Origin: Octopus bimaculoides
Taxonomy: Eukaryota
Length of the DNA: 64,000 nucleotides
Assembly (NCBI RefSeq): GCF_001194135.2
Contig: NC_068994.1
Coordinates: 39,179,946 to 39,243,945 of the forward strand
Direction of reading: 5' to 3'
Shown here: positions 1-58,591 of the stretch, one piece after another
Layout: each line of letters begins with the position of its first letter
Position numbering within the stretch: the stretch's first letter is position 1
Made by a program: the position numbers and the translations under genes
The notes under the pieces: generated by a model
The model's input: the letters and a program-made list of their open reading frames with translations, nothing else
What the model was told of the DNA's origin: nothing
Databases searched by the model: none

Positions 1-837
1 AATCCATTCACAAAGCTTTGTTTGACCCAGGGCTATAGCAGAAGATAACTTCAAGGTGCCATGCAGTGGGACTGAAACCAAAACCACGTGGTTGAAATGC
101 AAACTTTTTAAACCATATAGTCACACCTGTGCCTTGCTATGCCTTGGTACACCTGCATCTTGCCACACCTGTATTTCCGACCCATGCAAGGAGGGAAAAG
201 TAGATCGATGTTAAAATGATAATGATGATGATGATGGAATATATGTATCTCTATGTAACAAGTGCTGTTCATTATGCATTTTCTAATATACAGTATACTT
301 ATGTATTCTATAGAACAACAAAATGAATTGTAAATAAATTTTATCAGAAAGCAAGAGGGATAGTAATACTGGAAGGACAGGGAAAATATACAGAAGCAAG
401 AAGAATTTAAGAAATGATTTGAAACAGAGTAACAAACAACTAATGGACTGAAAAACAGATTTATAAAACGATTGATAGGTAGGATGAATTTTAAATGGAA
501 TGGGAAAAATGCAGAATAATTAAGCATTAAAGAAAAATAGTTATTCACTCTTGCTTCACAACAGCATTTTATAAATCTGACATCATGAACCCCTTTGTTA
601 AATCTTTAGGTATGCTAATTAATGCTTCAACATGATACTTTTAGTGCCAAAAAATAATTACCAAAAAATCAATAATATTTCGAAATTGAATTTTTATACA
701 TTTTCAAAATGGTATAACAATCAGGATCACTTATTGATGATTTCCATCTCTCATCATGCTTTTGGCAAATTGCTTATTATTGGCTCCAGTTCTTAAGGGG
801 TTAATCTAATGTCTCATTAAATTGTGAGGAATATCAT

Positions 838-1590
838 CATCATCATCATCATCGTTTAACGTCCGCTTTCCATGCTAGCATGGGTTGGACGATTTGACTG
901 AGGACTGGTGAAACCGGATGGCAACACCAGGCTCCAGTCTGATTTGGCAGAGTTTCTACAGCTGGATGCCCTTCCTAACGCCAACCACTCAGAGAGTGTA
1001 GTGGGTGCTTTTACGTGTCACCCGCACGAAAACGGCCACGCTCGAAATGGTGTCTTTTATGTGCCACCCGCACAAGCCAGTCCAGGGGCACTGGCAACGA
1101 TCTCGCTCGAGAATCCTACAGGAGCCAGTCAGGCGGTACTGGCAACAGCCACGCTCAAAATGGTGCATCTCATGTGCCACCCGCACAAGAACCAGTCCAG
1201 GGGCACNNNNNNNNNNGAGGACTGGTGAAACCGGATGGCAACACCAGGCTCCAGTCTGATTTGGCAGAGTTTCTACAGCTGGATGCCCTTCCTAACGCCA
1301 ACCACTCAGAGAGTGTAGTGGGTGCTTTTACGTGTCACCCGCACGAAAACGGCCACGCTCGAAATGGTGTCTTTTATGTGCCACCCGCACAAGCCAGTCC
1401 AGGGGCACTGGCAACGATCTCGCTCGAGAATCCTACAGGAGCCAGTCAGGCGGTACTGGCAACAGCCACGCTCAAAATGGTGCATCTCATGTGCCACCCG
1501 CACAAGAACCAGTCCAGGGGCACTGGCAACGATCTTACTTGGCTTGCCGGGTCTTCTCACGCACAGCCCATTTCCAAAGGTCTCGGTCCG
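838..1590 (-). mobile_element. RTE-derived element (family B) with a (GAT)n tail and internal ~75-bp subrepeats; 307 bp duplicated across the gap
   Basis: The minus 5' end encodes DRDLW..AVREKTRQAK*. The 3' end reads ..aggaagggcatccagctgtagaaactctgcc..gcatggaaagcggacgttaaacgatgatg. Confidence 0.85.
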
Positions 1591-3658: not shown

Positions 3659-5049
3659 NNNNNNNNNNNNNNNNNNNNNNNNNNNNNNNNNNNNNNNNNN
3701 NNNNNNNNNNNNNNNNNNNNNNNNNNNNNNNNNNNNNNNNNNNNNNNNNNNNNNNNNNNNNNNNNNNNNNNNNNNNNNNNNNNNNNNNNNNNNNNNNNNN
3801 NNNNNNNNNNNNNNNNNNNNNNNNNNNNNNNNNNNNNNNNNNNNNNNNNNNNNNNNNNNNNNNNNNNNNNNNNNNNNNNNNNNNNNNNNNNNNNNNNNNN
3901 NTATATATGTATGTATATATGTATTGAGAGGGCTAAAGTGACCATGGACACTGCCTTTCACTCTTGACTAGCTAATAAGAAAAAGTAATATAAAACTCAA
4001 TAACTAAGAAAGATATTGGTGTTCGAATGTTTACAGCAATTTTACTGCAAGCAGTTAAACACACAATGTGCTTAGATCAGCAGCTTCTGATGTATGGAAA
4101 CTACTCTTTCAGGCTGCACATTGATGAATAAATGATTGTGTAAAAACTGCAATAATAGCTATGACAAAGCTAAGGGTGTTGATCATGATAATACTATGAT
4201 AAATCTACATGTTTGTATTTGCACTGGTGTAAATACAAATAGGAAAAGTAAATAAGACTACTGTTGAAAGAAGTCCTTAGATATATCCTAACAAATAGAA
4301 AATTAATAGTAGATTTGTCAAAATTATACTGCCAACGATGTATAAAATGATATATAGACCATTTGAAAGCTAACGCAATTTTCTTACCGAAATCAAAATA
4401 ATAGCTTTAGCAAACATATTTAAAGACATTAACATTACTTGGATTGTGTTGCAGTAATGTAAATATATGATATTATTGATATGGTATTGAAAGTTGAATG
4501 GTAAATTCTTTTATGACAGTGCAGCAATCAACAGAATGACATTTATCAAACTTAAGAAGAAACCAAATAGTTAGGATATCAGCCTCAAAGCTATAGTTCG
4601 AACCATATCATAAAAATTCTATTGTCTCATTCTTCTTTTAGTCTATGTGGCTTCAAATAAGTCGATTCCTTCTTTAATATAGGCACAAGCATAGTAATGT
4701 GGCCAAGAAGTTCACTTTATAACTACTAGATGCGGGTTCAGTCCCACTGCACAGCATCTTGGGAAAATGTCTTCTGTTGACAAATGCTGTGTAAATGAAT
4801 TTGGTAGATGGAAACTATGTTGAAACCCACTGTGCACGTGTGTATGTGTGTGTGTGTGTGTGTGTGAGTTTTTGTTTTTGTCTCTCACTGCTTAACAACT
4901 GGTATAAGATTATGTACATCCCCATATATTAGTGATTCAGCAAAAATACAAAACAAAGAAGACTAATAATATAAGTATTAAAATCGATTTGATTCACTTA
5001 AAAAGGAAAAAAAAACCAAGGCATGCCCCAGCATGACTACAGCTTTTCT

Positions 5050-5459
5050 GGAGTGGCTGTGTAGTAAGTAGCTTGCTTACCAACCACATAGTTCCGGGTT
5101 CAGTCCCACTGCATGGCACCTTGGGCAAGTGTCTTCTACTATTGCCTCGGGCCAACCAAAGTCTTGTGAGTGAATTTGGGAGACGGAAACTGAAAGAAGC
5201 CCATCGTATATATCTATATATATATGTATGTATGTGTATATGTTTGTGTGTCTGTGTTTGTCTCCCCAACATCGCCTGACAACTGATGGTGGTGTGTTTA
5301 CGTCCCTGTAACTTAGCAGTTCAGCAAAAGAGACCGATAGAACAAGTACTAGGCTTACAAAGAATAAGTCCTGGGGTCGATTTGCTCGCCTAAAGGCGGT
5401 GCTCCAGCATGGCCACAGTCAAATGACTGAAACAAGTAAAAGAGTAAAAGAGTAAAGAG
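5050..5459 (+). mobile_element. tRNA-derived SINE family A, full length
   Basis: Head ggagtggctgtgtagtaag..gggttcagtccc (A/B-box-like), then ggcaccttgggcaagtgtc, an internal microsatellite and an (agtaaaag)n tail. Confidence 0.88.
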
Positions 5460-6809
5460 AGTATATAATAGAAATAGCACCAAAAAGTTCCAGTATGTAG
5501 AAATAATGCATTAAATAGTAGATCGGTATCATTTTATATTTTCTTTTCAAGATGATGAGTGTTGGAGGGGTTCATATTTGTTTTAGTCAATTCCTATTCA
5601 GTTACAGACCTTCTATATGGATCAGGCAAGTATGTCTCACTCATACAATGTTATAGCTTTTGTGGCTGGAAACTCAACATAACACCAACTGAATGTGCTG
5701 GGTGCATTTTATCAAGATATCCATTTCAAACCAAAGACACTATTCTACTATGATTATCATTGAATCTGCTCTTGTATATTAATGAATAGAATCATATTAT
5801 CTTAATAGCTCTAAATCATATTATTATCTCAATAGCTATGTGAACTCTGTATTACAGTCATCAAAATATATTTGCATTTGCATAATTTTCAATAAGCTCA
5901 GATATGGCTGTGTTGTTAAGAAGTTTACTTCATAACCACATGGTTTTTGGATTCAGTCTCACTGTACAGCAAACATTTTTTACCATGGTCTTAGGCTGAT
6001 CAATACCTTGTGACTGAATTTGTGAATTTGGTAGATGGAAACTACAGTAGGCCCAGTATGTATGTGTGTGTTTGTATGTACATATGTAGGTATGTATGCA
6101 TGTATGTATGTATTGTTTAGATGACGAGAATTTAGAAACTTTGAGAGATGTGATATAAACTGTTTTTAATAGTGGAGTTTAAAGATAAATCAATAGATAG
6201 TGTTTTTAAACATTAGAAAAAAATACTTTAGATTGAATAAGTCAAATGCTTCTTTGGGACTTCATGGTAAGAACAAAGCTTCTAAAATGGATGGAAGAAT
6301 TCAAAGGATTGACTTGGTCCAATGGTTGAACATCTATCATGTTTGAGTTCCAATGGCAGGTTTTGGCTTTCTCCATCCTAAGTTCTTTTTAGTCCAATAT
6401 TTAAAAATATTATTATTTGTAGCTTTATATACTTCAAGTTCCACTTTTAAAACATATTATATGTGTGCTGTGTGTGTATTCATGTGTGTGCATGTTTGTA
6501 TGTGTGCATGAACAAATATCTATAACTTTTATACTTTCTGTGTTGACATTGCAAATTGTCAGTCTTTGCTCAAAATAGGTAAGAGCTGGCTAAAAGGGAA
6601 ACCATCCAGCTGAAAAATCCTAACTCAGTATCATTTCCCATCCAAATCATGATAGCATAAAAAAAAAATGATTTTTAATTGAATGAGTGTTCAAATATTC
6701 TACAGTATAATAATCAGATACCAAAAATGTTTTAGGAAATTGCACTATTATTTCCTTGTTCTGATATTGAAATCTTTACTATATTTAGAACTTCAAAATT
6801 TACTTAGGA

Positions 6810-7879: not shown

Positions 7880-7968
7880 NNNNNNNNNNNNNNNNNNNNN
7901 NNNNNNNNNNNNNNNNNNNNNNNNNNNNNNNNNNNNNNNNNNNNNNNNNNNNNNNNNNNNNNCATGAT

Positions 7969-9714: not shown

Positions 9715-10015
9715 GTACATATGTATGCGTGTACATATGTATGTGTTTATGCTTGTGTGTATATATGTGTTTATGTTTTGTGTCTCCTTGTCTTGACATC
9801 TCATGTTTGTCATAAATGAGTGTCACTGTCATACAAGTAGTGTCATTCATTTTCAATACTGTGCAAGAACATGTTTGTCCATGGTAAAATATTACCCCAT
9901 TTGGAAGCAACTGAAGGTTAGCAATAGAAAGGGCAACTGGTTGTAGAAAAATCTGCCTCAATAAATTCCATCTGACCCATGCAGGCAAGGAAAAAACAGA
10001 TATTAAATGATGATG
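9505..10015 (+). mobile_element. SINE with a family A head and an RTE-type (GAT)n tail
   Basis: The A head (9505-9660) is followed by a different body ending tagaaagggcaactggttgtagaaaaatctgcc..gacccatgc..ttaaatgatgatg. Confidence 0.7.
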
Positions 10016-16701: not shown

Positions 16702-16961
16702 NNNNNNNNNNNNNNNNNNNNNNNNNNNNNNNNNNNNNNNNNNNNNNNNNNNNNNNNNNNNNNNNNNNNNNNNNNNNNNNNNNNNNNNNNNNNNNNNNNN
16801 NNNNNNNNNNNNNNNNNNNNNNNNNNNNNNNNNNNNNNNNNNNNNNNNNNNNNNNAACAAGGTTACAAAGTGAGCGTCTTAACTTCACAACCATGCCAAT
16901 ATACTCAAATGAAACTGATTTAAAATACTACTGCACATTCTGAACACCAATATTTTTTTTT

Positions 16962-22420: not shown

Positions 22421-24685
22421 CAAGTATTAGCTTACAAAGTTAAGAGGAAAATTGAACATTTAAGGTATCAATTTTACTGATCTGGTAGGTCCTGCAAAGA
22501 CTGTTAGCACTGCCCATTTTCTTCAGAACCAGCAATTAAAGAGAAAATGGTATATGTGAATGGACAAGAAGTCATTGTTGATAATCTACAACTGCTGCTG
22601 CTATGTGGTTAAATCAGACAGTGAATCCTCGATTATAAACACAAAACCAATATGTTCCATTAAAAAAAAATGCTCCATAGCTACTTAATGTCTTAAGTAT
22701 TTAAATACACAATTTGGAAGCAATGACTTAATAGGGTTAATTTATCTTTTGCAGTTTCACAAAACTGTTAGAATAAATAGTTGGAATAATGCTAGAGTAG
22801 GGTAAGTTGATATATTGGTTAAGAGAATCTGTTTGCCTCCCATTTCATATTGAATTATAGAGTACAAGGGAAAAGAAAACATAAAAAAAAACACAATTAG
22901 ACATTATAAGGACAGAGCAAAAAGAGTAATTTAAGACGTTAATTACAGATAAGTTTCTTGCAATCCTGGTGTCTTGAATGCGCTTAGAATTTTAATATGC
23001 AAAAATAGCATTTTAAAAATAAATATAAAAAGGAAAATAATGCTGAAAGGTGAGGCATAAATTTGAAAAAGAATTGATTTTCCTTTTGTTCCTTTTTTTT
23101 TTTTTTTTATAAGTGATCAAGTTATATATTTCCTTTACAACTATTAGTTCTCTTGCTGTGAAAGGAAAAATACTTATTTCAGTAAAACTATATAACTATA
23201 TCTTTACAATGCTATTCTTGCAGTTAAGATATTTTTATTTTTTATCTTCAATAACAGAATATTTTGTACTATCAAAAAATAAATAATAAATAAATAAATA
23301 AATAAAATTTAAAAAACCAAAAGAAAGAAAGAAATCAGTAAAGATGTTTAGTTGTGAATAATGTCAACTATATTCTTTATTTTTTCATTTTCAGTACCTT
23401 TTACACCTATTTTCTAGCTTTTAGTTCTAATTGGCTGACCTGATAGGCTGATATATTGTAATCTGCTGCATTGGTGATAGTTAAACACTTAATATGGGAT
23501 ATTTTGTCCATAGCCAAGACTGCCAACATTCTGTGGACTAGCTGGTTGTTATTCTGTACTTAATGGGCAGAAGAATAACTATGGTTCAGGAAATTAACTT
23601 CAACATCATGTGTTTTTGGATGAAGTTAATTCTGAGTTTGACTTTACTGCAAAACACAATAAACACGTATCTTCTTCTATAATTATAGATTGATCAATGC
23701 ATTTGTGAGCAACATATAGTAAACATTATACACACACACATATATAAATGCATACACACACACACACACTCACACACACACACACACACTCACACACACA
23801 CACACACACTCACACACATACATATTAATGAAATTCCAACTACGTCTGATTTTCAAATTTTATTATCTGCACATTATTTTACAATTTTAAAATATTGAAA
23901 TAACCTAGTACTTTTATGTGTTACATAATCATCAGGTTTATGTAGTGACAGTCATGTTCCACAATTGACAATTGTGTTCCACAAACATACAAACTCAAGA
24001 TATATATATATATATCCTCATCATCATCATCATTGTTTAACATCTGCAATGTGCAGATAATTTCTTCCCGTTCTCCCCCCAGTCTAGAACGCCTTGCAGA
24101 AATGAAAAATATCATGGATACTGGACTTTCTGCTTTGTCTTAATGATATTAAAAAACAAGAAAAAAAAAAAAAAGAAACTTATTAACACATGATGTTCAC
24201 TAATGNNNNNNNNNNNNNNNNNNNNNNNNNNNNNNNNNNNNNNNNNNNNNNNNNNNNNNNNNNNNNNNNNNNNNNNNNNNNNNNNNNNNNNNNNNNNNNN
24301 NNNNNNNNNNNNNNNNNNNNNNNNNNNNNNNNNNNNNNNNNNNNNNNNNNNNNNNNNNNNNNNNNNNNNNNNNNNNNNNNNNNNNNNNNNNNNNNNNNNN
24401 NNNNNNNNNNNNNNNNNNNNNNNNNNNNNNNNNNNNNNNNNNNNNNNNNNNNNNNNNNNNNNNNNNNNNNNNNNNNNNNNNNNNNNNNNNNNNNNNNNNN
24501 NNNNNNNNNNNNNNNNNNNNNNNNNNNNNNNNNNNNNNNNNNNNNNNNNNNNNAAATATTGAAATAACCTAGTACTTTTATGTGTTACATAATCATCAGG
24601 TTTATGTAGTGACAGTCATGTTCCACAATTGACAATTGTGTTCCACAAACATACAAACTCAAGATATATATATATATATATATCC

Positions 24686-24917
24686 TCATCATCATCATCA
24701 TTGTTTAACATCCGCTTTCCATGCTAGCATGGGTTGGACGACTTGACTGAGGACTGGTGGACCAGATGGCTACACCAGGCTCCAATCTGATTTGGCAGAG
24801 TTTCTACAGCTGGATGCCCTTCCTAATGCCAACCACTCTGAGAGTGTAGTGGGAGCTTTTACGTGCCACCGGCATGAAGGCCAGTCAGGCGGTACTGGCA
24901 ATGGCCACGCTCAAAGT
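24686..24917 (-). mobile_element. Family B element 3' portion
   Basis: Same 3' sequence as the other family B copies. Confidence 0.85.
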
Positions 24918-29453: not shown

Positions 29454-30191
29454 ACTATTAAGGACAAAATCCAAAATTACAGGTAAAAACTCAATTAAAA
29501 TCAATTTATAAAAAATTAAAATTAAATTGATCTTTACAGAGTAAGATATATATAAATTTATAGTTTTAGTGGATTTTCATCGATGAGTTCATGAACCTTG
29601 GTTCTTTTCCCTAAAACTATATATTTATAAGCCAGCTGGAGGAGATGTCCTCCTGGGGCTAAAAGCAACAGTAACATCCACCCCTCGGGGTCAGCCACAT
29701 TTAAGTGGCAAATATACTTCACTATATATTTATATATATATTTATATATGTATGTATGTATGTATGCATGTGTCTGTATTTGTCCCCCTGCCATCACTTG
29801 ACAATTGATGCTGGTGTGTTTATGTCCCCATAACCTAGTGGTTCAGCAAAAGAGACTGATAGAATAAATATTAGGCTTACAAAGAGTAAATCCTGGGGTT
29901 GATTTGCTTGACTAAAACCTTTTAAGGTGATGCTCCAGCATGGTCGTAGTCAAATGACCAAAACAAATAAAAGAATGAAAGAATAATAATAATAATCCTT
30001 TCTACTATGGGTACAAGGCCTGAAATTTGGGGCAGCAGTATAGTCGATTATATCGACCCCAATACCCAACTGGTACTTATTTTATTGACACTGAAAGGAT
30101 AAGGGCAAAGTCGACTTCAATGGACAAAATACCACTAAGCATTTTGCCTGGCATGCTAACGATTCTGCCAGCTTGCAGCCTTAATAGTAAT

Positions 30192-39531: not shown

Positions 39532-41689
39532 CTGAGGACAGTTTACAAATGAACATTAACATTGACTGATTTTTAGCAGACACTTAAATGAAATATTAGA
39601 TCCATTGACTGAGACATGAAGGAACTCTTTCAGATATCCATCTTCATGTAATGTATCTAAGGTAAGACAACCCAGTAAGAACTATATTTCTTAAGATGAC
39701 TTGGAACAAAGCTCAAGATAAATTCTAAAATGTTGCTACTCCCTTGAAGTGAACTGAAATTCATGCATGAAAGAAATGGTTTCTAGCAAGTTTGAGAAAG
39801 ATAATATTTTGCTGAGGAAGTCTAATAATACTGAAATATATTTGAATTAACTCCCTTACTAGCTGAAATTATAAAAATAATATTAACCATTGGTTACTGA
39901 ATGTATGTTGTCTCTTTTCCTACACATAAGTAGATATTTGATACCTTTTAGAAGGTTCAGCACAAATACCAGCTTGATGCCTGGTATTAGTAACACTGCC
40001 AAAAGCTACAATATGAAAAGGGTTTGTAAGAATATCTATACTACATCATCCAGTATGCAGTTAAACAATGGACACATTCAGGTCTTAGGTAGAGGGGTCC
40101 ATTTGATAGAAAAATATATTGTAGCCCTCATCCAATGCTAGTACATCCAGCAATAAGCCTACAACTTGTCCTGGGAGGCTGGGCACCCAAAACAGATCCA
40201 GGAGAGAACAACCATAAGTAATTGGGGAATTCGAATGTCACAATTCTTACAGGTAAAGCCCCACCTTCCATGAATTGAGCACAGAAAAAAAATGGATGGG
40301 AAAAAAAAAAGAAGATATTTAATGCTCAGTTCATTAAATAAGTTATCACTAAATTTAATTAAATTAGATTGGCTCATTTATGAGTTGAATACTTTTGCCA
40401 TGGACATGATGGTATATCAACTGTGAACCTATTCAGAAATGGATATAGTTTGGTAGTGTAATTCTCAGCTGGTATATAAGTATTATTAGTATCATTGTCA
40501 TCGTCGTCGTCATCATACATATATACATACGTACATACACATATGTATGTATGTATGAATGAATGAAATATTGATACCTAACATTGGTACAGGGCCACAA
40601 ATTTTGGAAGGGAGATTATAAACAATTACATTTCTTAACAGTTATTTTTATTTTATCAACCCCTGAAGGATGCAAAACAAAGCTATTCTAGGTGGAATTT
40701 GAACTTGAAACATAAAGGATAGCAAGACATTTTATCTAAGACTTTAATGTTTTTGCCAAAATAAAATACTGGAACTATAATAAGTAAATTCATTTGAAAT
40801 TCTGATCTTCTGAAATGCATTAAAAAATATCATTGTAATTTTCCAATAAATGAACATAGCATACTGGTTACAGTGTTGGACTCACAATTGTAAGATGGGG
40901 ATTGCAGTTCCCTAACCAGGCTGTGAATTGTGTTCTTGAGTAAAAAGTATTTCTTTTGACATTACTTTAATCTACTCACCTGAAAAGGAGTAACTTCCTC
41001 AGCTTAACTGTCTTAGCTAAGGGTAAACGCTGTGATAGATTGGTGGACTGTTTAAATGGGGAAGTATAGAACTTTTGGGTTGCTTAAATGGCTGGCCTTG
41101 TGCCTCTTATGTTAGAAATAATATGTATCATTATTATACCTGCTTCCAAGGTTTGATGAATGGCAGAATAATTACATCATCAGACAAAATGTCTTACAGT
41201 ATTTGCTCTGTATCTTCTGGGTTCAAAATCCACAAAAGTATACTTTACCATTCTTCCAGCTGGGATGATTAAAATAAGTACTTGTCAGATATTGGTATTA
41301 ATGTAATCAACTAACATTCCCTCTAATCTAAAATTGCTCATCTTGTGTCCAAGTTAAAAACCAATCATTTCACCTGCTCCTACTTAATTAACTATAGTTT
41401 CCACAAAGGTTTGATGTAGAATGAATTACTTTGATGTTATGAAGAAAAGAAAAATCTGAACAATTCATGCAACACCTTTCATCAGTGACAGAATAACTGC
41501 CTGAAATGTTAGAATTTTCTTTTTCCTCGGAGTAAAATAATTTTCTCTTTGCAAAGCTTTAATATTTATTTTTCTGCCAACACAGACTTTTGCAAGATGC
41601 CTCAGATTCTGTTTCACACTTTGATATCTTTAAACACAGCACATCTATAAGTGATTTCATCTCAGATGAAAAGTATATATATATATATA

Positions 41690-42147
41690 TCATCATCATC
41701 ATCATCGTTTAACGTCCGCTTTCCATGCTAGCATGGGTTGGACGACTTGACTGAGGACTGGTGAAACCGGATGGCAACACCAAGCTCCAATCTAAATTTG
41801 GCAGAGTTTCTACAGCTGGATGCCCTTCCTAACGCCAACCACTCAGAGAGTGTAGTAGATGCTTTTATGTGTCACCTGCACGAAGGCCAGTCAGGCGATA
41901 CTGGCAACGGCCACGCTCGAAATGGTGTCTTTTATGTGCCACCCACACAAGCCAGTCCAGGGGCACTGGCAACGATCTCGCTCGAAAATCCTATGGGAGC
42001 CAGTCAGGCGGTACTGGCAATGGCCACGCTCAAAATGGTGCATCTCATGTGTCACCCGCACAAGAGCCAGTCCAGGGGCACTGGCAACGATCTTACTTGG
42101 CTTGCCGGGTCTTCTCACGCACAGCACATTTCCAAAGGTCTCGGTCC
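41690..42147 (-). mobile_element. Family B RTE-derived element, young copy
   Basis: Highly similar to 838-1590, with the same 5' endpoint (ccaaaggtctcggtcc). Confidence 0.88.
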
Positions 42148-43689: not shown

Positions 43690-44172
43690 CTCAAAGGGGT
43701 ACGTACTACATAGTGATGGAGTTCCCTAGTTTTCAACAATCTTAATGTTGAGTTTAGTCTCTTTCAGGGCTTNNNNNNNNNNAGGGGTACGTACTACATA
43801 GTGATGGAGTTCCCTAGTTTTCAACAATCTTAATGTTGAGTTTAGTCTCTTTCAGGGCTTTTCTATATCTACGGGCTAGTTCTCCATGATATTTGTCAGT
43901 TTTATACCACGTGTTCGCCTTGTTTGCTTTGTCACAAGTTCTTTGTATCCTATTCGAGTCTTTATTTCTATATCTAGGGCAGGTACCACTGGTATCATTA
44001 CGTATAATGTTATCTAATTTCCTTCTAGTACCCCTGTATACTCAAACCCTATCTTTCTGATCATATCCAGAGAATTGCATGCAGTGCATGAAGTTCTGTA
44101 TATGTTTTTTCATTTCATAGGGTTCGCATAGTGGGGACACATTCATTATCCTAACTAAGTCTGCTATCAGTA
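43690..44172 (-). mobile_element. Penelope-like element fragment (RT thumb/linker region)
   Basis: LIADLVRIMNVSPLCEPYEMKKHIQNFMHCMQFSGYDQKDRV..GTCPRYRNKD..WYKTDKYHGELARRYRKALKETKLNIKIVEN matches the PLE 'RMxxSGY..PLYR..GELA..IKVVE' pattern as I recall it. Confidence 0.6.
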
Positions 44173-44711: not shown

Positions 44712-44747
<36 letters not shown>

Positions 44748-44750
<3 letters not shown>

Positions 44751-44927
44751 TCATCATCATCATCATCGTTTAACGTCCGCTTTCTATGCTAGCATGGGTT
44801 GGACGATTTGACTGAGGACTGGTGAAACCGGATGGCAACACCAGGCTCCAGTCTGATTTGGCAGAGTTTCTACAGCTGGATGCCCTTCCTAACGCCAACC
44901 ACTCAGAGAGTGTAGTGGGTGCTTTTA
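44748..44927 (-). mobile_element. Family B element 3' portion, cut by the gap
   Basis: Near-identical to the 3' end of the 838-1590 copy. Confidence 0.85.
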
Positions 44928-45517
44928 NNNNNNNNNNNNNNNNNNNNNNNNNNNNNNNNNNNNNNNNNNNNNNNNNNNNNNNNNNNNNNNNNNNNNNNNN
45001 NNNNNNNNNNNNNNNNNNNNNNNNNNNNNNNNNNNNNNNNNNNNNNNNNNNNNNNNNNNNNNNNNNNNNNNNNNNNNNNNNNNNNNNNNNNNNNNNNNNN
45101 NNNNNNNNNNNNNNNNNNNNNNNNNNNNNNNNNNNNNNNNNNNNNNNNNNNNNNNNNNNNNNNNNNNNNNNNNNNNNNNNNNNNNNNNNNNNNNNNNNNN
45201 NNNNNNNNNNNNNNNNNNNNNNNNNNNNNNNNNNNNNNNNNNNNNNNNNNNNNNNNNNNNNNNNNNNNNNNNNNNNNNNNNNNNNNNNNNNNNNNNNNNN
45301 NNNNNNNNNNNNNNNNNNNNNNNNNNNNNNNNNNNNNNNNNNNNNNNNNNNNNNNNNNNNNNNNNNNNNNNNNNNNNNNNNNNNNNNNNNNNNNNNNNNN
45401 NNNNNNNNNNNNNNNNNNNNNNNNNNNNNNNNNNNNNNNNNNNNNNNNNNNNNNNNNNNNNNNNNNNNNNNNNNNNNNNNNNNNNNNNNNNNNNNNNNNN
45501 NNNNNNNNNNNNNNNNN
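44928..45517. other. Assembly gap. Others: 1207-1216, 3659-3901, 7880-7962, 16702-16855, 24206-24553, 43773-43782
   Basis: N runs, mostly flanked by microsatellites or duplicated sequence. Confidence 1.
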
Positions 45518-45587
<70 letters not shown>

Positions 45588-46545
45588 ATTATATATCCAT
45601 ATATATATTTATATATATATATGCATATAACATTTTACCCATGCATGCATGGAAGATAGACATTAAACGATGATGATGATATATATATGCATGTATATAT
45701 GTGTGTGTATATTACACATAAATACATATATATATGTGTGTGTATGTATACTTACATATCCTATGTGTATGTGATTGTGCATATTTGTGTGTGTGTGTGT
45801 GTCTGTCTGGCTGTGTTTCTAAATCTACATTCTGTGTGCTTTGTGTGAGAAACTGTTGAGTTACAATAGTGAAATTTAGTGTTACTGCACTCTCGAAAAA
45901 CTTTTTTGCGGGTACTGCACTTTCAAAAACATGTGGAATAAAACATTCCTTGCTCAAAAAAAAAAAAAAAAAAGTAACGGTTATTGGAATGCATCCATCT
46001 GTAAAACAATATTTCAATGATATCAATGATATATATTTGACAAACCCATGCTAACCTGGAAAAAAAAAGAAAAAAAAAAAGAAAAACAGGCATAAAAATG
46101 ATTGAATCCTATATAAATATTTGTCTGTGAATTCATGTTTTTGTAATCCTCAGATAATTTTTTTATCAAAGAAGAAAAAATCTAAGTTAAGTTCGCAATG
46201 AAAAAATAAACAACGAAAAATACAGGAAATTTCTAGAAAAATAATCATTTTTTTCTTATACAATAAAGATAAATTATCTTACTTTGTGTTTCAAGTAATT
46301 TTGAATGGATCATAAAGAAAATACTTCCTTAATAGGAAATGTTTCCCCCTTGATATAATTTATATAAAGTTGTATGTATGCAAGCCTTTAATAAGAATCT
46401 GTATTGAAGATTTCAATCTTAATGAATAAGGTAGAAATCTAAATTTTTACGATTTATCTCCCCTTCATTTATAACCATTTAACATTACAAAAGTCCTGTT
46501 AAGCAGTTATGAATGCCACTTGAATAAAATAAATAGGTGTCTTAC

Positions 46546-48974
46546 CTGAATAGATCTGTCTATGTTATCGGGATAATGGCTTGGTGATTCTGAAGGTTTC
46601 CTTTCACATGTTAGTTCATGTTTAAAGTTATCTTCTCGACTTGGTTTTGCCTTCTGAAATTCTTTGCTATGTTCAGGAGGAAGTCTCACTGCCATAGCAG
46701 ATGGCGAATCATATTGAAGTGCTGCTTGTTCACACAAATATTCTAATTGTCTATTTTCATCTAAAAATACATTGGAAGGTCTTAATTCACCTCTTTGTTG
46801 TGAATTTCTCCTGTTATTTTTTCTGACGATGCATATAGTGATAGATACCACTAGGATTACAGAAGCAGTCATTGCTACAATGACAATGATGATAAATAAG
46901 TTGATGTGTATTTTATCATCGTACTGTGCGTCTACAGCTGTAAACATTTTCAAAGTCTTGTTGCTGACTGTTAGAGTCAAAAATAATGTAGTTGTAGCTG
47001 TGAGAACAGGTGTACCGCTGTCTTTGACAGCTATATGTAGTTCATATAATCCAGCATCATTTTGATAGATGGCACGAGAATATGACAACACTCCACTGTA
47101 AGGATTAACAGTGAACATTTGTTTATTATTACCTTTAATTATTTCGTATCTGAGGAAGGAATTTACATGACTGTCTCTATCAGAAGCTCTTAATGTTGTG
47201 ATGTCACTCTTACTCTTTGGATGGTAGTGGACATCTAGATTGAAAGGGTTAACACTGGGAAATGTAAAATAGGGAGCATTGTCATTTTCATCCATAACTT
47301 CAACAACTACATTTGCTGTGTTGTTAAGAGATGGTATCCCATTGTCTTGAACTAAAACTTTGAATTTATAGATTTCTTGTTGTTCATGATCCAGTGACTG
47401 TGTAGTTGAAATAAAACCAAATTTAGAAATCTTAAATGGAAAATTATATCTGTTGTTACTTAAAAGATAATATGTTAGTTCACCTCCAGGTCCCAAATCA
47501 GGATCTGTAGCATTGATTAATCCGATTGGAAAGAATGGATTTTCATTTTCATAAGTCAAAAACTTGAACATAGTTTTAGCAAAGTGTGGCTGTACATCAT
47601 TGATATCTGTTACCTGAATTGAAAATTTCCTTTCAGATTTAAGTGAAGGGATTCCTTTGTCGTGGCAACTTATTACCAAATTTATGTTACTTTCTACTTC
47701 TCGGTCAACCACTTTCTTTATTATAACTTTATATTTCTTTTCACCAAGCTTCTGGAGTTGAAAATGTTCGTGGTCAACAACACAATCTACATTACCATTT
47801 TCTCCATTGTCGTTATCAGTGACTTTAACATAGGCAATGAAACTGCCAACTTCTATTCCTTCTGATATAGATGCTATGTTACCATTGGATTTTGAAACAA
47901 AGTTTACATCAATGATGGGTGCATCGTTATGGCTGTTCACCATATTTACAAGCACAGTGGCAATGGAACTCAGTGGAGGGTTCCCTCCATCTTGAGCTTC
48001 AATAAATAGTTTGTATTTGTTTACTTCACCCGATTTGAACTTTTCTGGCAGAAGTATTTCCCCAGTCAATTCATTCAGTATGAAATTTTGTTTAGCATCA
48101 TCAGTTGTTTTAGAACTGAAATAGTAAGAAATGTTTCCATTTCTACCTGAATCTAAATCAGTTGCTGAGAGAGTAATGATTGGCGTGTTTCTTTGTCTGT
48201 TATTCACTGTAACGTTATAGACATTCTGTGAGAATACTGGAGAATTATCATTAACATCCGAAACTGATATCTTTATGTTTAACACTCCTTGCTCTGGTGG
48301 ATATCCTCCATCCTTTGCAATAACTTGTAACATGTAAATTTCTTTTACTTCTCTGTCTAGTGTTGTTTCTAATGTAATTCCTAGTGAGTAAGAACCATCA
48401 ACTCTCTTGGAAACTGCGAGTGAAAATGGATCATAAGTATTTTTCACCAATTCATAACTAATCTGCGAATTCAATATACCAATATCTTTGTCAATAGCAT
48501 TGGGTATTGATCTTCTTGTACCTTTCCCATCGGTTTCATCAAACTGAAGCTCAATTTCTTTTGTTGGGAATTCAGGTTGATGGTCATTAACATCTTCTAT
48601 AATCACTTTGATTTCTAATATTTTTAGAAAAGATTCCTTTTTTTGTACAGCAATGTCTACTATTCTGAAGCACTCAGTGTTATATTTACAAAGAGCCTCA
48701 GCATTCAATCGCTGAGCTGTATAAAGTTTACCAGTTTTAGAAACATTGAACAGCTCTCCATTCTTTGTGTCTTTTTGTAGCTGCTTGAACCGTATTAGAT
48801 TTCTGTCTGTGATCAGTAATTCATCAATATGTGTGTCTCTGGTGATATCACCCAAATATACACCTGGGTTTCTATCTTCTTTCACATAGTAGGTAAAGTC
48901 TATACACTGACAGAAAGTTAGATAAAATGAAAGCAGATATACCCCAAGCAGTGTGTTCCAATCTAACGGTTTCA
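46546..48974 (-). CDS. Pcdh: Protocadherin large exon: signal peptide h-region, 6 EC repeats, TM helix, proximal cytoplasmic tail (cephalopod-type protocadherin)
   Basis: 822-aa ORF (48975..46507). Cadherin motifs seen: DVNDHQPEF, DVNDNSPVF, DINDVQPHF, DENDNAPYF, LDRE/VDRE/LDHE, AxDGG, DxDxG. EC1 has a C-X5-C motif (CKYNTEC), and the TM is INLFIIIVIVAMTASVILVVSITICIV. The ORF 'start' GTG overlaps the acceptor ttttctatttatctacag|TG (exon starts 48974). The donor TTCAG|GTAAGA falls after Q810 (exon ends 46546, phase 0). Confidence 0.97.
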
Positions 48975-49099
48975 CTGTAGATAAATAGAAAATAATATTT
49001 AAAATAAGTTTTTAGATAAACAGAATAATATATAATAAAAATGTATTAAATATGCAATGAATATACAAACAAATTAATATAAATTAAATGCTTTAAGCA

Positions 49100-49565
49100 A
49101 TACTACATACATACATACATACACATACCAACACACATACATACATGCATACATACATAAATGCATACACACATACATACATGCATACATACACACACAA
49201 ACACGATACATACACACACAAACACGATACATACATACACAAACACGCACATGTACATACATATGTATGTATGTACGTACATACATACACACATACACAA
49301 ACACACACACATACATATGTACATACATACGTACATACCCACACACATAAACATGCATACATACGTACATACCCACACACATAAACATGCATACATACAT
49401 ACACAAACACACACATACATATGTATGTACATACACATACAGAAACACACTCACATACATACATACACAAACACACACATACATATGTATGTACATACAC
49501 ATACAGAAACACACTCACATACATACATACATACATACATACATACATACATACATACATACATG
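49100..49565. repeat. Compound (TACA)/(CA) microsatellite in the predicted first coding intron of the protocadherin
   Basis: Low-complexity AC/AT tract with internally duplicated blocks. Confidence 0.9.
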
Positions 49566-49976
49566 CGTGTGTATATTTGAATGAAAAACGTGTAAGAGAA
49601 TCCATAGAGAATTTCCTCTGAATTTGCCTTGTTAAAAATTTACTGGTTGAAATTTTTCATAAAAATTAATTAAAGCTAAAATGCACGATATAAAATATAG
49701 CCAATAAAACAGAAAAAAAAAAAAATTATGCACATCTAAACACTATCAGATTACATTGATACTTCTTAAATTATATTGATACTTTGCCTACTACTCTGAT
49801 TCATTTGGGGGACACATAATACAGGAATAAAATACAGAAAACAGGAATAAAATAAATGGCTTAAAAAGTAAAAGGTAAAAAAAATTTTGAAGCAAAGAAA
49901 AAAAAAAGCCAACAGAAACAACAACAGTATATCTCTGTATCTCTAGCTTAAATGTCATTTTGCAAAGATAACTTAC

Positions 49977-50040
49977 CATTACTGTACCATAGCGATTTTA
50001 AGATTAACATGCTACATGCATTATAGTATAACATGTTCTT
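49977..50040 (-). CDS. Pcdh: Predicted 64-nt upstream micro-exon of the protocadherin carrying the start codon (MLYYNACSMLILKSLWYSN+V)
   Basis: Minus strand: acceptor ttctattttcatgatgcatctcacag|AAGAAC and perfect donor ATG|GTAAGT. ATGs at 50034 and 50010 are in frame. The exon ends in phase 1 (AAT G|), matching the TG that opens the large exon (G|TG = Val). Predicted intron 49976..48975. Confidence 0.62.
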
Positions 50041-50210
50041 CTGTGAGATGCATCATGAAAATAGAACTGATTAATTAAAAACTGAATCAAATCCTGAATG
50101 ATAGTTTACTCTCTCTCACTCTCACTCTCTATCTGTCTAACACCTATACCTTTCTCTATCTGTCTATCTACATATATGTTTGTGTATGTATGTATGTATG
50201 TCTCTCTCCT

Positions 50211-51348: not shown

Positions 51349-51568
51349 CTCTTTTTACTCTTTACTCTTTTACTTGTTTCAGTCATTTTGTCTGCGGCCA
51401 TACTGGAGCACCGGCTTTATAGTCGAGTAAATCGACCCCAGAGCTTATTCTTTGTAAGCCTAGTACTTATTTTATCGGCCTCTTTTGCCGAACCGCTAGA
51501 TTACGGGGACGTAAACATACCAGCATCGGTTGTCAAGCGATGCTGGGGCGACAAACAGACGCACACAC

Positions 51569-51631
<63 letters not shown>

Positions 51632-51795
51632 CGATGGGCGTCTTCCAGTTTCTGTCTACCAAATCCACTCACAAGGATTTGGTCAGCCTGAGGCTATAGT
51701 AGAAGACGCTTGCGGTAGGTGCCACACAGTGGGACTGAACCCGGGACCATGTGGTTGGTAAGCAAGTTACTTACCACACAGCCACTCCTGTGCCT
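51349..51795 (-). mobile_element. SINE family A, full length
   Basis: Reverse complement of the 5050-5459 structure. Confidence 0.88.
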
Positions 51796-52406
51796 ATTCA
51801 CAATTTACAACTGAAAGGCAACTAGTATAGTTATCACTGAAGTGATGGCGGGCGCTAGTCAGCACCAACACTGCTATATATATATATATATACATACATG
51901 CATAAATATCCTTAATTAAGCTAAATATCAAAAAAGGAAATAAATCAGTTTGAACTACAATATTAGCCATATCCATACCAACCTTTCTAAAGCATATAAT
52001 AAAATATGAAATATATATGCAAACCCATACTGATGAACATGTAAAAAAGAAGCTGGATATATACAAAATATTTATATGTCTTTTCCCTCCAATTTTTTCT
52101 TTTTTTTTGTATTGCTTTTGCAATATGAACAAATTTCTATGAAAGTGAACATAATACATTTATCATATAGGTTTTGTCACATACACACATATGCACACTC
52201 ACACACACATGCACTCATACAAAGATGTATACACCTAAACATTACATTAATGTTACATAAGTCTGTAGAGTACTGAGCCATTTCCATACTAATTCAATGA
52301 TTAGATAGCTTAGATGATCAAACAATAGAACATTCATTACTAAAGCGAACGGATGATCCATTTTGTGTATGTATGTATGTATTATACATGTGTGTGTATA
52401 TGAGTT

Positions 52407-55557: not shown

Positions 55558-56776
55558 TCTTTTGCAGCATCAGTATGATATGCATTTACTTTGATGTAAC
55601 AATTAATTTCGATTATCCTTAATAATACTGCATCATGGAATTTCCAGTGGTTGGCGTTAGGAAGGGCATCCAGCTGTAGAAACTCTGCCAAATCAGACTG
55701 GAGCCTGGTGTTGCCATCCGGTTTCACCAGTCCTCAGTCAAATCGTCCAACCCATGCTAGCATGGAAAGCGGACGTTAAACGATGATGATGATGATGATG
55801 ATGATGATGGTGTCACAATGTCACACTTGAACACATTGACTTGTGTCATTGTTGTGTTAACCTATTCAATTAATTATCATATTAATTAATTCCTTTTAAT
55901 TTCAGGGAAACTGTCTCGGTATGACTGTATCCATTGACAGTGTCACAGTGTAACAGTGTTTTTAGTGTGACTCAGTTTTGGTGTCATAGTGTGACTGTGT
56001 TCCTATGTAACTGTACTGGAACATGAATGCATAACAGTGTGATAATGTGACTGTATCTCAGTGTGACTTTTACTGTCACAATGATACTGTGCACCAGTGT
56101 GACTGTATCACATTGTAACATCTTGTCAGTGTGTCAATGTTTCCACATCACAATGATTGACTGAATTCAATATGTGAAGCACTATACAAATTTTAATCTA
56201 AAATAGCTTTAAAAACTTACTTTAAATTAAAACTTGTATAAGGCTTCAAACATTGAATTCGGTCCACTGTTGTGATGTGGAAATGTTGCCATACTATGTG
56301 ACTGCTACATTATGACACACTTCCATCATGACAATCACACTGGGATACAATCACAATGTCACACTGTAATGTATTCATCCTAGAACACAGTCACTCTGTG
56401 ATAACCAAAACATAGTCACACCAAAACACTCACATCGGGACACTGTCATTGGACACAATTTCACTGACACACAATTTCCTTAGGATTAAAATAGATTAAT
56501 TGAATGAGTTAATATAGACAGTCACACTTTGACAGTGTCACGGTGTCCCAGTGTTATACTGTGACAGTCTCCCTAGCATTTGAACAGATTAATTGAATAA
56601 GTTAATATAGATCGTCACATACTTTGACAATGTCACAGTGTCACAGTCTCCCAGTGTTACACTGCAATACCATAACACTGCTAAATGCATTATGCATTGT
56701 TATTAAGTATTATTAAAAATAATCTAAATTATCTGTTTAATCAGGTAAACATATATTATGCTAATGCTGCAAAAGA
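55558..56776. mobile_element. Foldback-like element: long imperfect inverted repeat with modular TGTCACAGTG-type subrepeats and almost no loop
   Basis: Arms align as reverse complements from tcttttgcagcat (55558) / atgctgcaaaaga (56776) inward to tatacaaattttaat (56183) / attaaaacttgtata (56240). Centre about 56211. Confidence 0.8.
55636..55810 (+). mobile_element. Family B element 3' portion inserted into the left arm of the foldback element
   Basis: Young copy with a (GAT)n tail; the palindrome arm resumes on both sides. Confidence 0.85.
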
Positions 56777-57093: not shown

Positions 57094-57908
57094 AAGTACA
57101 TTAAAGGAGTAGTTAAATAACATCAGAAAGTGAGGAAGAGAGAGAAGGGAGAGGGGGGAAGGAGAGTGAGTACAAATTGTAAGGTTGGTTGATGATTTGG
57201 AAAGAGGAAGGGAAAAAGCTGTGCCCCTTGCTGTGTACCTATGGTCTCCTGAAATTATGGATTTTTTATTGGTTGAATCACAAATGAGGATGGAGTTTTA
57301 TATGAAGAAAATGTTACAAATCCATAAGTATGAAAGCAAAACTTTAAATTCTCATCATGAAACAATGAAAAATTATTGAATACAAAGTACTTACAAGTAA
57401 AATCTTACCACACGAATGGCAGAAAAGATCTTTAACTCTTTAGCAAACAGATTATTCTGTCGAAGGTAATGCTTACTTATTCTCATTGTTTTGAATTAAT
57501 CCTGCATTAAACAATGGATGGGGCTTCTGCAATTTCTTGCTGAATGACCTCAGATGCTCTGGATATGGTGCTCAAATTTTTATGTTCACATAAGATCTCA
57601 CCTTCCATTAAATCTACATTGTCTGTAAAGCTGCACAGGTGTCAAAGTAATTGCGGAGCATGATTACACCACCCTCATCACTGTGCCATGCACCTTTACC
57701 CAGGAGTCCTTTCAGTTTCCATCTACTGAATACACTCACAAGGCTACTATAGTAGAAGACACTTGCTCAAGGTGCCATGCAGTGGGATGAAACCTGGAGC
57801 CAGGTGGTTGGGAAGAAAACTTCTCAACCATGCACACACACACGCACACACACACATACACACACACATACACGCACACACACACATACACACACACACA
57901 CGCACACA

Positions 57909-58166: not shown

Positions 58167-58591
58167 CTCTTTTACTCTTTTACTTGTTTCAGTCATTTGA
58201 CTGCGGCCATGCTGGAGCACCGCCTTTAGTCGAGAATATCGACCCCAGGACTTATCCTTTAGATGCCTAGTACTTATTCTATCGGTCTCTTTTGCCGAAC
58301 CGCTAAGTTACGGGGACGTAAACACACCACCATCAGTTGTCAAGCGATGTTGAGGGGGAAAACACAGACACACAAGCACATATACACACATACATATATA
58401 TATATGTATATATATATATATACATATATACGACGAGCTTCTTTCAGTTTCCGTCTACCAAATCCACTCACAAGGCTTTGGTGGGCCCGAGGCTATAGTA
58501 GAAGACACTTGCCCAAGGTGCCACGTAGTGGGAATGAACCCGGAACCATGTGGTTGGAAAGCAAGCTACTTACCACACAGCCTCTTCTGCC
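58167..58591 (-). mobile_element. SINE family A, full length
   Basis: Reverse complement of the 5050-5459 structure. Confidence 0.88.

What the first reader, a model, noticed from the sequence alone, without database searches (positions are those of the whole stretch)
48974..50040. Protocadherin start codon is on a separate 64-nt micro-exon
Seen: the large exon has no in-frame ATG before EC2 and begins right after a strong acceptor. About 1 kb upstream, an acceptor-bounded exon with a perfect GTAAGT donor supplies two in-frame ATGs (A at -3) in the needed phase 1, giving M(LYYNACSM)LILKSLWYSN-V-KPLDWNTLLGVYLLSFYLTFCQC|IDF. Its own acceptor implies a further non-coding 5' exon. Known: vertebrate clustered Pcdh variable exons carry their own ATG. 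Inference: here translation is gated by splicing, so micro-exon inclusion or alternative leaders could switch the gene on or off or be shared among paralogues.
Basis: partly seen in the sequence, partly recalled or inferred. Interest (0 to 1): 0.7.

Follow-up and report, generated by a model that had tools for sequence, protein, structure and literature searches.

The report
Octopus protocadherin with possibly split-off start codon
An intact, apparently unannotated octopus protocadherin gene has no start codon in its large exon; a 64-base exon 1 kb upstream could supply one, but no transcript evidence was available and the gene may instead have just lost its start.

Summary
The minus-strand protocadherin exon 48974..46546 opens right after ctacag. 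It has no in-frame ATG for 224 codons. It codes for a normal signal-peptide core, six cadherin repeats and a transmembrane segment, and ends in CAG|GTAAGA. The segment 50040..49977 carries two in-frame ATGs and ends in G|GTAAGT in the phase needed.

This gene is an exception within its family. In all 9 related octopod genes I examined in genomic DNA, the ATG is contiguous with the large exon. That exon is itself preceded by a 5'UTR intron, whose acceptor lies 3-55 nt upstream of the ATG where one is recognisable.

The large exon shows family-typical purifying selection, so it is not an old pseudogene. No protein above 64% identity exists in any database searched, so there is no annotation or transcript support.

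The spliced model restores the leader spacing (M-x10-V-K) and the acceptor-to-signal-core distance (84 nt versus 85-90 nt) seen in the nearest paralogues. However, ATG-plus-donor candidates are common by chance: 10 lie in the 15 kb upstream.

My estimates are about 0.45 for the micro-exon model, 0.3 for a very recent start loss, and 0.2 for a different upstream exon. The idea that splicing gates translation or that the leader is shared among paralogues has no support.

The parts
46546..48974 (-). Large protocadherin exon of 2,429 nt. It codes for the distal part of the leader, the signal-peptide core, Cadherin_2 plus five Cadherin domains, a transmembrane segment and the proximal cytoplasmic part. 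It starts in phase (TG of a split Val codon) and ends on a complete codon.
   Evidence: Translation. Pfam match. It is 64% identical over 793 aa to O. bimaculoides XP_014774848. It has 2 mismatches at 140 family-conserved columns, against a family median of 1.5.
46540..46545 (-). Donor GTAAGA that closes the large exon (ATT CAG|GTAAGA).
   Evidence: Sequence. Paralogues end their large exon at the equivalent place with gtaagt- or gtgagt-type donors.
48975..48980 (-). Acceptor ctacag behind a pyrimidine-rich tract. Its final G (48975) is also the first base of the GTG (Val) codon when the DNA is read contiguously.
   Evidence: Sequence. Score 4.1, in the top 1.8% of AG sites. It is the best acceptor within -1300..+200 nt.
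48973..48975 (-). GTG codon at -24 from the predicted cleavage site. It may be a mutated ATG, the remnant of cag|ATG after a 1-nt deletion, or the split codon G|TG or A|TG.
   Evidence: The best homologue P0001 has its Met1 exactly 24 residues before the same motif, although a gapped BLASTP alignment places it differently.
48952..48954 (-). ACA (Thr) at position -17, where the family almost always has Met.
   Evidence: Of 116 homologues, 49 start exactly at -17, and the longer leaders I inspected keep a Met there. The window codons are read.
48975..49976 (-). Candidate 1,002-nt intron. It runs GTAAGT...ctacag and contains an (ATAC)n/(ACATAC)n microsatellite at 49100..49564.
   Evidence: Sequence and TRF. 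The non-microsatellite parts have no other copy in about 700 kb of comparison sequence.
49971..49976 (-). Perfect GTAAGT donor after AATG.
   Evidence: Sequence. Score 5.63; 19 (minus strand) and 14 (plus strand) equal or better sites in 64 kb.
49977..50040 (-). Candidate 64-nt leader exon with ATG1 (50034..50032) and ATG2 (50010..50008). It ends in phase 1.
   Evidence: No detectable DNA similarity to the leaders or 5'UTRs of L005 and L006.
50041..50046 (-). Weak candidate acceptor (tcacag) in front of the small exon.
   Evidence: Score 2.18, about 2 such sites per kb per strand. In spliced mRNA it lies 84 nt upstream of the -17 codon, compared with 85-90 nt in L003b, L007 and L005.
50072..50100 (-). 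29-nt element CATTCAGGATTTGATTCAGTTTTTAATTA. It matches 25/29 bases of a sequence 162-190 nt upstream of the ATG of the P0008-type paralogue in O. vulgaris (L005) and O. bimaculoides (L008).
   Evidence: Empirical p is about 0.0025-0.01. A whole-window scan found one equally scoring unrelated hit.

Best explanation
This is a real protocadherin gene that has been maintained by selection. It comes from Octopus bimaculoides or a very close relative.

In this gene, the 5' end of the ancestral large exon has been separated from the rest by a roughly 1-kb intron. The separated piece carries a few bases of 5'UTR, the ATG and the first 11-19 leader codons. The intron is GTAAGT...ctacag, and half of it is microsatellite.

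Proposed transcript path:
1. A non-coding 5' exon lies further upstream, as in the paralogues.
2. It splices to the small exon 50040..49977, where translation starts at ATG1 or ATG2.
3. Splicing 49977^48974 joins G to TG, making a Val codon.
4. The reading frame continues into KPLDWN, then the hydrophobic core TLLGVYLLSFYLTF, then CQC|IDF.

Shown by the data: the sequence features, the phase, the family architecture, and the selective constraint on the large exon.

Inferred only: that the two splice sites are actually used, that the intron is a gain in this lineage, and that splicing is constitutive rather than regulatory.
For: 1. The large exon is intact and under family-typical constraint: 2 mismatches at 140 conserved columns, which is the median rank. 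It has a normal closing donor. It therefore needs a start and has had one for most of its history.
2. Neither family start position is usable. Position -17 is ACA and -24 is GTG, with no ATG in any frame within about 130 nt upstream.
3. Large exons that open at an acceptor behind a 5' exon are the family norm. Strong acceptors lie 3-55 nt upstream of the ATG in L002, L003b, L005, L006, L007 and L008, and are conserved in Argonauta orthologues. O. vulgaris isoforms P0149 and P0171 join upstream exons exactly at those sites.
4. The donor at 49976 is top-tier and in the required phase, with an open frame back to two ATGs. The expected number of such candidates is about 0.07 per kb.
5. From ATG2 the product has M-x10-V-K. 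That is the spacing in the neighbouring paralogues P0002, P0008 and P0168 (M-x10-V-K/R), where GTG AAA .. AAC ATG corresponds to GTG AAA [+12 nt] AAC ACA in the window.
6. The spliced distance from the 50041 acceptor to the -17 codon is 84 nt, against 85-90 nt in paralogues. The contiguous exon is only 20 nt long there, so it is short by about the length of the small exon.
7. The 29-nt element just upstream of the small exon matches the 5' flank of the P0008-type paralogue at 25/29 bases.
Against: - There is no transcript, protein or orthologue. The best database identity is 64%, 58% and 63% in three searches. Orthologues in this family are normally at least 90% identical across O. bimaculoides, O. 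sinensis, O. vulgaris and Argonauta. RNA-seq-aided annotation pipelines therefore produced no model here.
- All 9 paralogous genes inspected have the ATG contiguous with the large exon.
- The small exon has no DNA homology to paralogue leaders.
- Its own acceptor is weak.
- The proximal region 49098..48975 also aligns to paralogue 5' flanks at a similar p value, so flank homology does not discriminate between models.
- Ten alternative ATG-plus-donor candidates lie in the 15 kb upstream.
- Several of the supporting coincidences were noticed after the fact.
Confidence: 0.45

Rival explanations
1. The gene has very recently lost its start codon, and the small exon is a chance construct.

Under this reading, the GTG at 48975 is a mutated ATG. 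An A-to-G change there would also create the AG of the apparent acceptor. Alternatively, a family-type acceptor abutted the start (cag|ATG, compare cag|ATA ATG in L002) and one A was deleted.

The locus would then be a fresh pseudogene or null allele, an assembly error, or a gene translated weakly from GUG.
For: - The Val is 24 residues before the cleavage motif. That falls inside the family range of 16-31, and the best homologue P0001 starts exactly at -24.
- MKPLDWN-TLLGVYLLSFYLTF-CQC would be a textbook 24-residue signal peptide.
- A at -3 (ACA GTG A) would give a good initiation context.
- No protein model exists for this 810-codon ORF in any annotation. That fits pseudogene status or lack of expression.
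- Possible pseudogene fragments have been reported within cephalopod protocadherin clusters, chiefly for squid (PMC9068888).
- ATG-plus-donor candidates are expected by chance.
- The window is a draft assembly with 7 gaps.
Against: - The ORF has no other lesion and shows normal constraint. A start codon is only a small share of the possible first disabling hits, which by my own rough estimate is about 1-2%, so a start-only lesion is rare a priori.
- The canonical -17 Met is also gone, which needs two substitutions (ATG to ACA). An upstream start has therefore been in use for some time.
- The exon begins 37-70 nt closer to the signal core than in any paralogue. The missing length equals that of the small exon.
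- Only 1.8% of AG sites have an acceptor context this good.
- A-to-I RNA editing cannot rescue the start, because it converts A to G and not G to A.
Confidence: 0.3
2. The acceptor at 48975 is real, but the partner is a different and probably distant 5' exon. This is the family-typical first exon, which lies more than 10 kb upstream in the paralogues.

That exon would either carry an in-frame ATG or end in A, so that splicing rebuilds A|TG and gives MKPLDWN...
For: - In paralogues the 5' exon is not found within 10 kb upstream of the large exon.
- Annotated O. vulgaris isoforms show that such exons can carry in-frame ATGs that read through the junction (P0149, P0171).
- Other candidates exist in the window. 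Examples are AAG|GTGAGA at 57601 (giving ME-), CAG|GTGACT at 54680 (giving MLET-) and AAA|GTGAGG at 59912, which would rebuild A|TG.
Against: - None of these candidates reproduces the paralogue leader spacing or the exon-length match that the 50040..49977 segment gives.
- Split start codons and one-base intron sliding are rare.
- This model does not explain why the exon is 5'-truncated relative to its paralogues.
Confidence: 0.2

Closest known systems
Octopod protocadherin genes of the same sub-cluster on O. bimaculoides chromosome CM046614.1 (XP_014774848 / P0001, XP_014774835 / P0161, XP_052829022 / P0168) and their O. vulgaris, O. sinensis and Argonauta orthologues
   Same: - One large exon of about 2.4 kb encodes the signal peptide, six cadherin repeats, the transmembrane segment and the proximal tail. 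It shares 57-64% amino-acid identity with the window exon.
- The large exon closes with a strong donor.
- The large exon sits behind an acceptor and a 5' exon.
- The 3' exons lie tens of kb downstream.
   Different: - In all 9 genes inspected, the ATG, and usually a second Met at -17, lies inside the large exon.
- In the window gene the large exon has no ATG. Its 5' end is 37-70 nt shorter, and a small exon 1 kb upstream may carry the start.
- No annotated protein corresponds to the window gene.
Vertebrate clustered protocadherins (alpha, beta, gamma variable exons)
   Same: - A large exon encodes the whole ectodomain, the transmembrane segment and part of the tail.
- Paralogues sit in tandem arrays.
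   Different: - Each vertebrate variable exon is a first exon, with its own promoter, conserved sequence element and ATG. It is spliced to shared constant exons (established knowledge).
- Cephalopods do not use shared constant exons (PMC9068888).
- The octopod large exon is preceded by a 5' exon. In the window gene it lacks an ATG.
N-terminally extended annotated isoforms of O. vulgaris protocadherins (CAI9732464 / P0171, CAI9732374 / P0149)
   Same: An upstream exon with an in-frame ATG is spliced onto the large exon at the acceptor just upstream of the normal start.
   Different: - In those isoforms the large exon keeps its own ATG, so the upstream ATG is optional and may be a longest-ORF annotation choice.
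- In the window gene an upstream ATG would be obligatory.

Membership tests
Protocadherin (cadherin superfamily) | N-terminal Cadherin_2-type EC1 followed by further cadherin repeats, six in total | tested here: met
   Pfam hits PF08266 (residues 47-128) and PF00028 with 5 stretches, E = 2e-71. Full-length alignment to annotated octopod protocadherins.
Protocadherin (cadherin superfamily) | Single transmembrane segment after EC6 and a cleavable N-terminal signal peptide | tested here: inconclusive
   The TM-like stretch LFIIIVIVAMTASVILVVSITICIV and the hydrophobic core TLLGVYLLSFYLTF followed by CQC|IDF are visible. No dedicated signal-peptide or TM predictor was available, and the initiator Met is unresolved.
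Octopod protocadherin gene architecture (large exon behind a 5'UTR intron) | Acceptor a few to about 55 nt upstream of the start codon, used by annotated transcripts | tested here: met
   Paralogues. In the window, the ctacag acceptor at 48975 is the best in its neighbourhood.
Octopod protocadherin gene architecture (large exon behind a 5'UTR intron) | Start ATG contiguous with the large exon, with Met at -17 and often also at -31 | tested here: not met
   No in-frame ATG for 224 codons. Position -17 is ACA and -24 is GTG. All 9 paralogous genes have a contiguous ATG.
Vertebrate-type clustered protocadherin locus | Variable exon is a first exon with its own ATG, spliced to constant exons shared by the cluster | tested here: not met
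   No ATG in the exon. No other protocadherin exon lies in the 64 kb. Each related locus fetched holds one large exon per 34-99 kb gene. The literature states that cephalopods do not share constant exons.
Pseudogene | Disabling lesions (frameshifts, stops) or relaxed constraint | tested here: inconclusive
   There are no stops or frameshifts in 810 codons, and only 2 mismatches at 140 conserved columns. The only possible lesion is the missing start. Absence from all annotations fits a very recent pseudogene but does not prove one.
Micro-exon | Exon length of about 30 nt or less (51 nt or less in looser usage) | tested here: not met
   The candidate exon is 64 nt. It is a small exon, not a micro-exon in the usual sense.
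Expressed, spliced exon | Junction-spanning transcript reads, or an annotated mRNA or protein containing the junction | not testable with these tools
   No octopus transcript collection could be searched. Protein searches that would have caught a translated transcript found nothing above 64% identity.

The most novel reading that the evidence does not exclude
An old, selectively maintained protocadherin gene has escaped annotation in four octopod genomes. It acquired a new intron of about 1 kb, rich in microsatellite, inside its signal-peptide coding region. The intron moved the start codon onto a separate 64-nt exon. This would be a datable intron gain in a rapidly duplicating neural recognition gene family. 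It would also be the only known family member whose translation depends on a splice.
Probability: 0.4. Interest if true: 0.4.

Novelty: new variant of a known kind. Interest (0 to 1): 0.3.

Why it matters
If the splice is real, three things follow:
- The octopus protocadherin repertoire contains at least one functional member that current annotations miss.
- The family norm that each large exon carries its own ATG has an exception.
- The locus would be a clean example of intron gain within a coding leader.

If the splice is not real, the locus is a snapshot of the very first step of gene death in a birth-and-death family.

Either way this is a gene-model question about one paralogue. It is not a new mechanism. 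A start codon on a small upstream exon is commonplace in animal genes, and nothing points to regulated switching.

Tried and rejected
1. Looking for the gene's own protein or transcript. Three large protein searches (whole exon, N-terminal 243 aa including the hypothetical leader, C-terminal 242 aa) gave best identities of 64%, 58% and 63%. There was no orthologue and no fragment.
2. Looking for the downstream cytoplasmic exons in the window. None were found. Paralogues have them 14-97 kb away.
3. Testing homology of the small exon to paralogue leaders or 5'UTRs. Scores were at or below random.
4. Building an nhmmer profile from three paralogue 5' flanks to scan the window without bias. The flanks do not align to each other, and the hits were microsatellites. 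The test was uninformative.
5. Using flank homology to decide which acceptor is the family acceptor. Both the region upstream of the small exon and the region upstream of the large exon align to paralogue flanks at similar empirical p values. This does not discriminate.
6. Checking a conserved block upstream of L002 and L004 as a possible family promoter element. It is gene-specific and absent from the window.
7. Testing an insertion with a target-site duplication (TACAGT at both intron ends). Removing the insert at that repeat breaks the reading frame, so I rejected it by reading the sequence.
8. Considering an indel that hides an out-of-frame ATG. No ATG occurs in any frame from about 130 nt upstream of the GTG to well inside the exon.
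9. Considering rescue by A-to-I RNA editing. Rejected on first principles, because editing reads as A to G and cannot turn GUG into AUG.
10. Placing the window on the chromosome through neighbouring loci. There is no overlap with L001, L007 or L008. An 86-kb stretch between L001 and L008 remains unsampled.
Full report
**What is in the sequence**

On the minus strand, an open frame of 822 codons runs from 48975 to 46507. It encodes a complete protocadherin ectodomain. Pfam finds Cadherin_2 plus five Cadherin stretches. A transmembrane segment and the proximal cytoplasmic part follow. The coding part stops at 46546, in front of CAG|GTAAGA.

The frame is closed by a stop 13 codons upstream of the GTG at 48975..48973. 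It has no ATG until about codon 225, which is inside EC2. The G of that GTG is the last base of ttattttctatttatctacag, so an exon starting at 48974 begins with TG.

About 1 kb upstream lies AAGAAC ATG .. ATG .. AAT G|GTAAGT (50040..49977, donor at 49976..49971). Joining 49977 to 48974 gives MLYYNACSMLILKSLWYSN-V-KPLDWNTLLGVYLLSFYLTFCQC|IDFTYYVKED. An in-frame TGA at 50055 means ATG1 is the first possible start in that frame.

The 1,002-nt interval is half (ATAC)n microsatellite. The rest has no other copy in about 700 kb of related sequence.

**Is it more than chance?**

I scored splice sites with a simple position-weight matrix against the window's own background.
- The donor is in the top 0.5% of GT sites: 33 equal or better on both strands.
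- The 48975 acceptor is in the top 1.8% of AG sites. It is the best within -1300..+200 nt.
- The acceptor at 50041 is ordinary, at about 2 per kb per strand.

About 27% of strong donors have an in-frame ATG before a stop in the phase-1 frame. The 15 kb upstream holds 10 ATG-bearing candidates with donor score >=3, and two of them have a donor at least as good as this one. A candidate of this quality is expected about 0.07 times per kb. On its own, then, the small exon is suggestive but not compelling.

**Where the window comes from**

Interspersed repeats in the window match O. bimaculoides loci at up to 99.4% identity. They match an O. vulgaris locus at 92.7% or less, and Argonauta loci essentially not at all. 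With seven N-gaps, the window looks like the O. bimaculoides draft assembly or a very close relative.

**The family norm**

The best homologues are octopod protocadherins at 57-64% identity. I examined nine of them in genomic DNA: L001, L002, two genes in L003, L004, L005, L006, L007 and L008.
- For the six proteins I mapped with tblastn (P0001, P0037, P0061, P0008, P0017, P0168), residues 1 to about 800 map as one block starting at the ATG.
- For the two L003 genes and L008, the ATG is seen contiguous with the exon by direct reading of the DNA.

The start is therefore inside the large exon in all nine.

Across 116 homologues, the distance from Met1 to the xDxxY motif peaks at 17 residues (49 cases). 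A second mode lies at 31, and the longer leaders I inspected keep a Met at -17. The window has Thr (ACA) at -17 and Val (GTG) at -24.

The large exon is not a first exon in this family.
- Strong acceptors lie 3-55 nt upstream of the ATG in L002, L003b, L005, L006, L007 and L008. L001 shows only a weak one at about -82.
- These acceptors are conserved between Octopus and Argonauta orthologues where the surrounding intron is not.
- O. vulgaris isoforms P0171 (..GSFHV|IHSVIISEIWKTIN-MNSH..) and P0149 (..VVIK|I-MECSLH..) join an upstream exon exactly at those predicted sites.
- Their upstream exons are not within 10 kb.

**Is the gene alive?**

At 140 alignment columns that are at least 95% conserved among 120 homologues, the window protein differs at 2. 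The family median is 1.5, and half of the annotated genes have 2 or more. The ORF has no stop or frameshift, and its closing donor is intact. This rules out an old pseudogene. If the start is missing, the loss is very recent.

Three protein searches found nothing above 64% identity. Orthologues in this family normally cluster at 90% or higher across O. bimaculoides, O. sinensis, O. vulgaris and Argonauta. The gene is therefore unannotated in all four species. This counts against a well-expressed, normally spliced gene, but it is indirect evidence.

**Evidence that favours the small-exon model beyond chance**

1. The neighbouring paralogues P0002, P0008 and P0168 have the leader M-x10-V-K/R-x-M(-17), encoded contiguously. 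Their DNA reads GTG AAA AAC ATG. The window reads GTG AAA [CCG TTA GAT TGG] AAC ACA. From ATG2, the spliced product is M-x10-V-K, which is the same spacing.
2. In paralogues, the acceptor-to-(-17 codon) distance is 85-90 nt. In the window's contiguous exon it is 20 nt. With the 64-nt exon added, it is 84 nt.
3. The 29-nt element at 50100..50072 matches 25/29 bases of a sequence 162-190 nt upstream of the ATG of the P0008-type gene, in both O. vulgaris and O. bimaculoides. The empirical p is about 0.0025-0.01.

**Caveats on that evidence**

- I noticed these coincidences after the fact.
- The small exon itself has no detectable homology to the leaders.
- A whole-window scan gave one equally scoring unrelated hit for the element.
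- The region just upstream of the large exon also aligns to paralogue flanks at comparable p values, because both are AT- and T-rich.

**Rival explanations**

*Start loss.* The Val is 24 residues before the cleavage motif, exactly where the best homologue P0001 starts. MKPLDWN... would be a textbook signal peptide. An A-to-G change would also create the AG of the "acceptor". A 1-nt deletion after a family-type cag|ATG would have the same effect.

Four points count against this rival. The ORF has no other lesion. The -17 Met was also lost, which needs two substitutions. The exon is 5'-truncated by about the length of the small exon. The acceptor context is good.

*A different upstream exon.* The distant family-type first exon could supply an ATG, or a final A that rebuilds A|TG. 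Candidates exist, and there is precedent for in-frame ATGs in such exons.

**Verdict**

The core interpretation, that the ATG is supplied by the 50040..49977 exon, is the single most likely model, at about 0.45. It is unproven. Start loss stands at about 0.3 and another upstream exon at about 0.2.

The further inference has no support. That inference covers translation gated by splicing, an on/off switch, and leaders shared among paralogues. No paralogue lies within the 64 kb, and each related locus fetched holds one large exon per 34-99 kb gene.

The literature states that cephalopod protocadherins are independent multi-exon genes, and reports possible pseudogene fragments in the clusters, chiefly for squid (PMC9068888). 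At 64 nt, the exon is small rather than a micro-exon.

If real, this is a structural variant of a known gene family, most simply an intron gain in the leader. Its interest is modest.

Noticed in passing
window 46546..48974 (-): The intact 810-codon protocadherin exon has no counterpart above 64% identity in any protein source searched. Orthologues of neighbouring family members are at least 90% identical across four octopod species. The gene appears to be unannotated everywhere.
   Followed up: partly
L002 9975..10003, L004 9975..10003, L005/L006 about 9930..10000, L007 9935..9958, L003 about 101150..101196: Octopod protocadherin large exons are preceded by a 5'UTR intron. Its acceptor, 3-55 nt upstream of the ATG, is conserved between Octopus and Argonauta. 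O. vulgaris isoforms CAI9732464 and CAI9732374 splice upstream ATG-bearing exons exactly there, giving N-terminally extended predicted proteins.
   Followed up: partly
window 50072..50100 (-); L005 9811..9839; L008 9812..9840: A 29-nt non-repetitive element (GGATTTGAT.CAGTTTTTAAT core) is shared between the window and the 5' flank of a 63%-identical paralogue in two Octopus species. It is only weakly recognisable in the Argonauta orthologue. It could be a regulatory motif, a small conversion tract or a chance match.
   Followed up: partly
window 48904..48922 (-): A second acceptor-like site, ctaactttctgtcag|TGT (first exon base 48906, phase 0), lies just before the last Cys codon of the signal peptide. 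It would allow a foreign leader exon to replace the whole signal peptide. Its score is only 2.55.
   Followed up: no
window 50008..50034 (-): The two ATGs of the small exon open similar 24-nt units (ATGTTATAC.. and ATGTTAATC.., 12/24 identical). This may be a small tandem duplication or a chance effect of AT-rich sequence.
   Followed up: no
window 833..1032, 24664..24878, 41675..41884, 44724..44927, 55646..55805: A SINE-like repeat of about 200 bp has copies up to 99.4% identical to copies in O. bimaculoides loci. Some copies carry a spurious ORF (..LAEFLQLDALPNANHSESVV..).
   Followed up: partly
window 5050..5476, 29723..29994, 51353..51797, 58168..58590: A second interspersed repeat family of about 430 bp is shared with O. 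bimaculoides and O. vulgaris loci at 73-88% identity.
   Followed up: no
window 1207..1216, 3659..3901, 7880..7962, 16702..16855, 24206..24553, 43773..43782, 44928..45517: Seven runs of N (10-590 bases) show that the window is a gapped draft assembly. The two 246-247-aa 'ORFs' at 44822..45659 are artefacts of the largest gap.
   Followed up: yes
L001, L002, L004-L008: Octopod protocadherin genes span 28-99 kb for 940-1010 codons. The two small 3' coding exons lie 14-97 kb downstream of the large exon. No other large exon lies inside the gene ranges fetched.
   Followed up: partly
CM046614.1 39,488,195..39,574,227 (O. bimaculoides; not fetched): An 86-kb stretch between the P0001 gene (L001) and the P0008-orthologue gene (L008) is not covered by any locus I could fetch. 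It is large enough to hold the 64-kb window, whose gene is most similar to exactly these neighbours.
   Followed up: no
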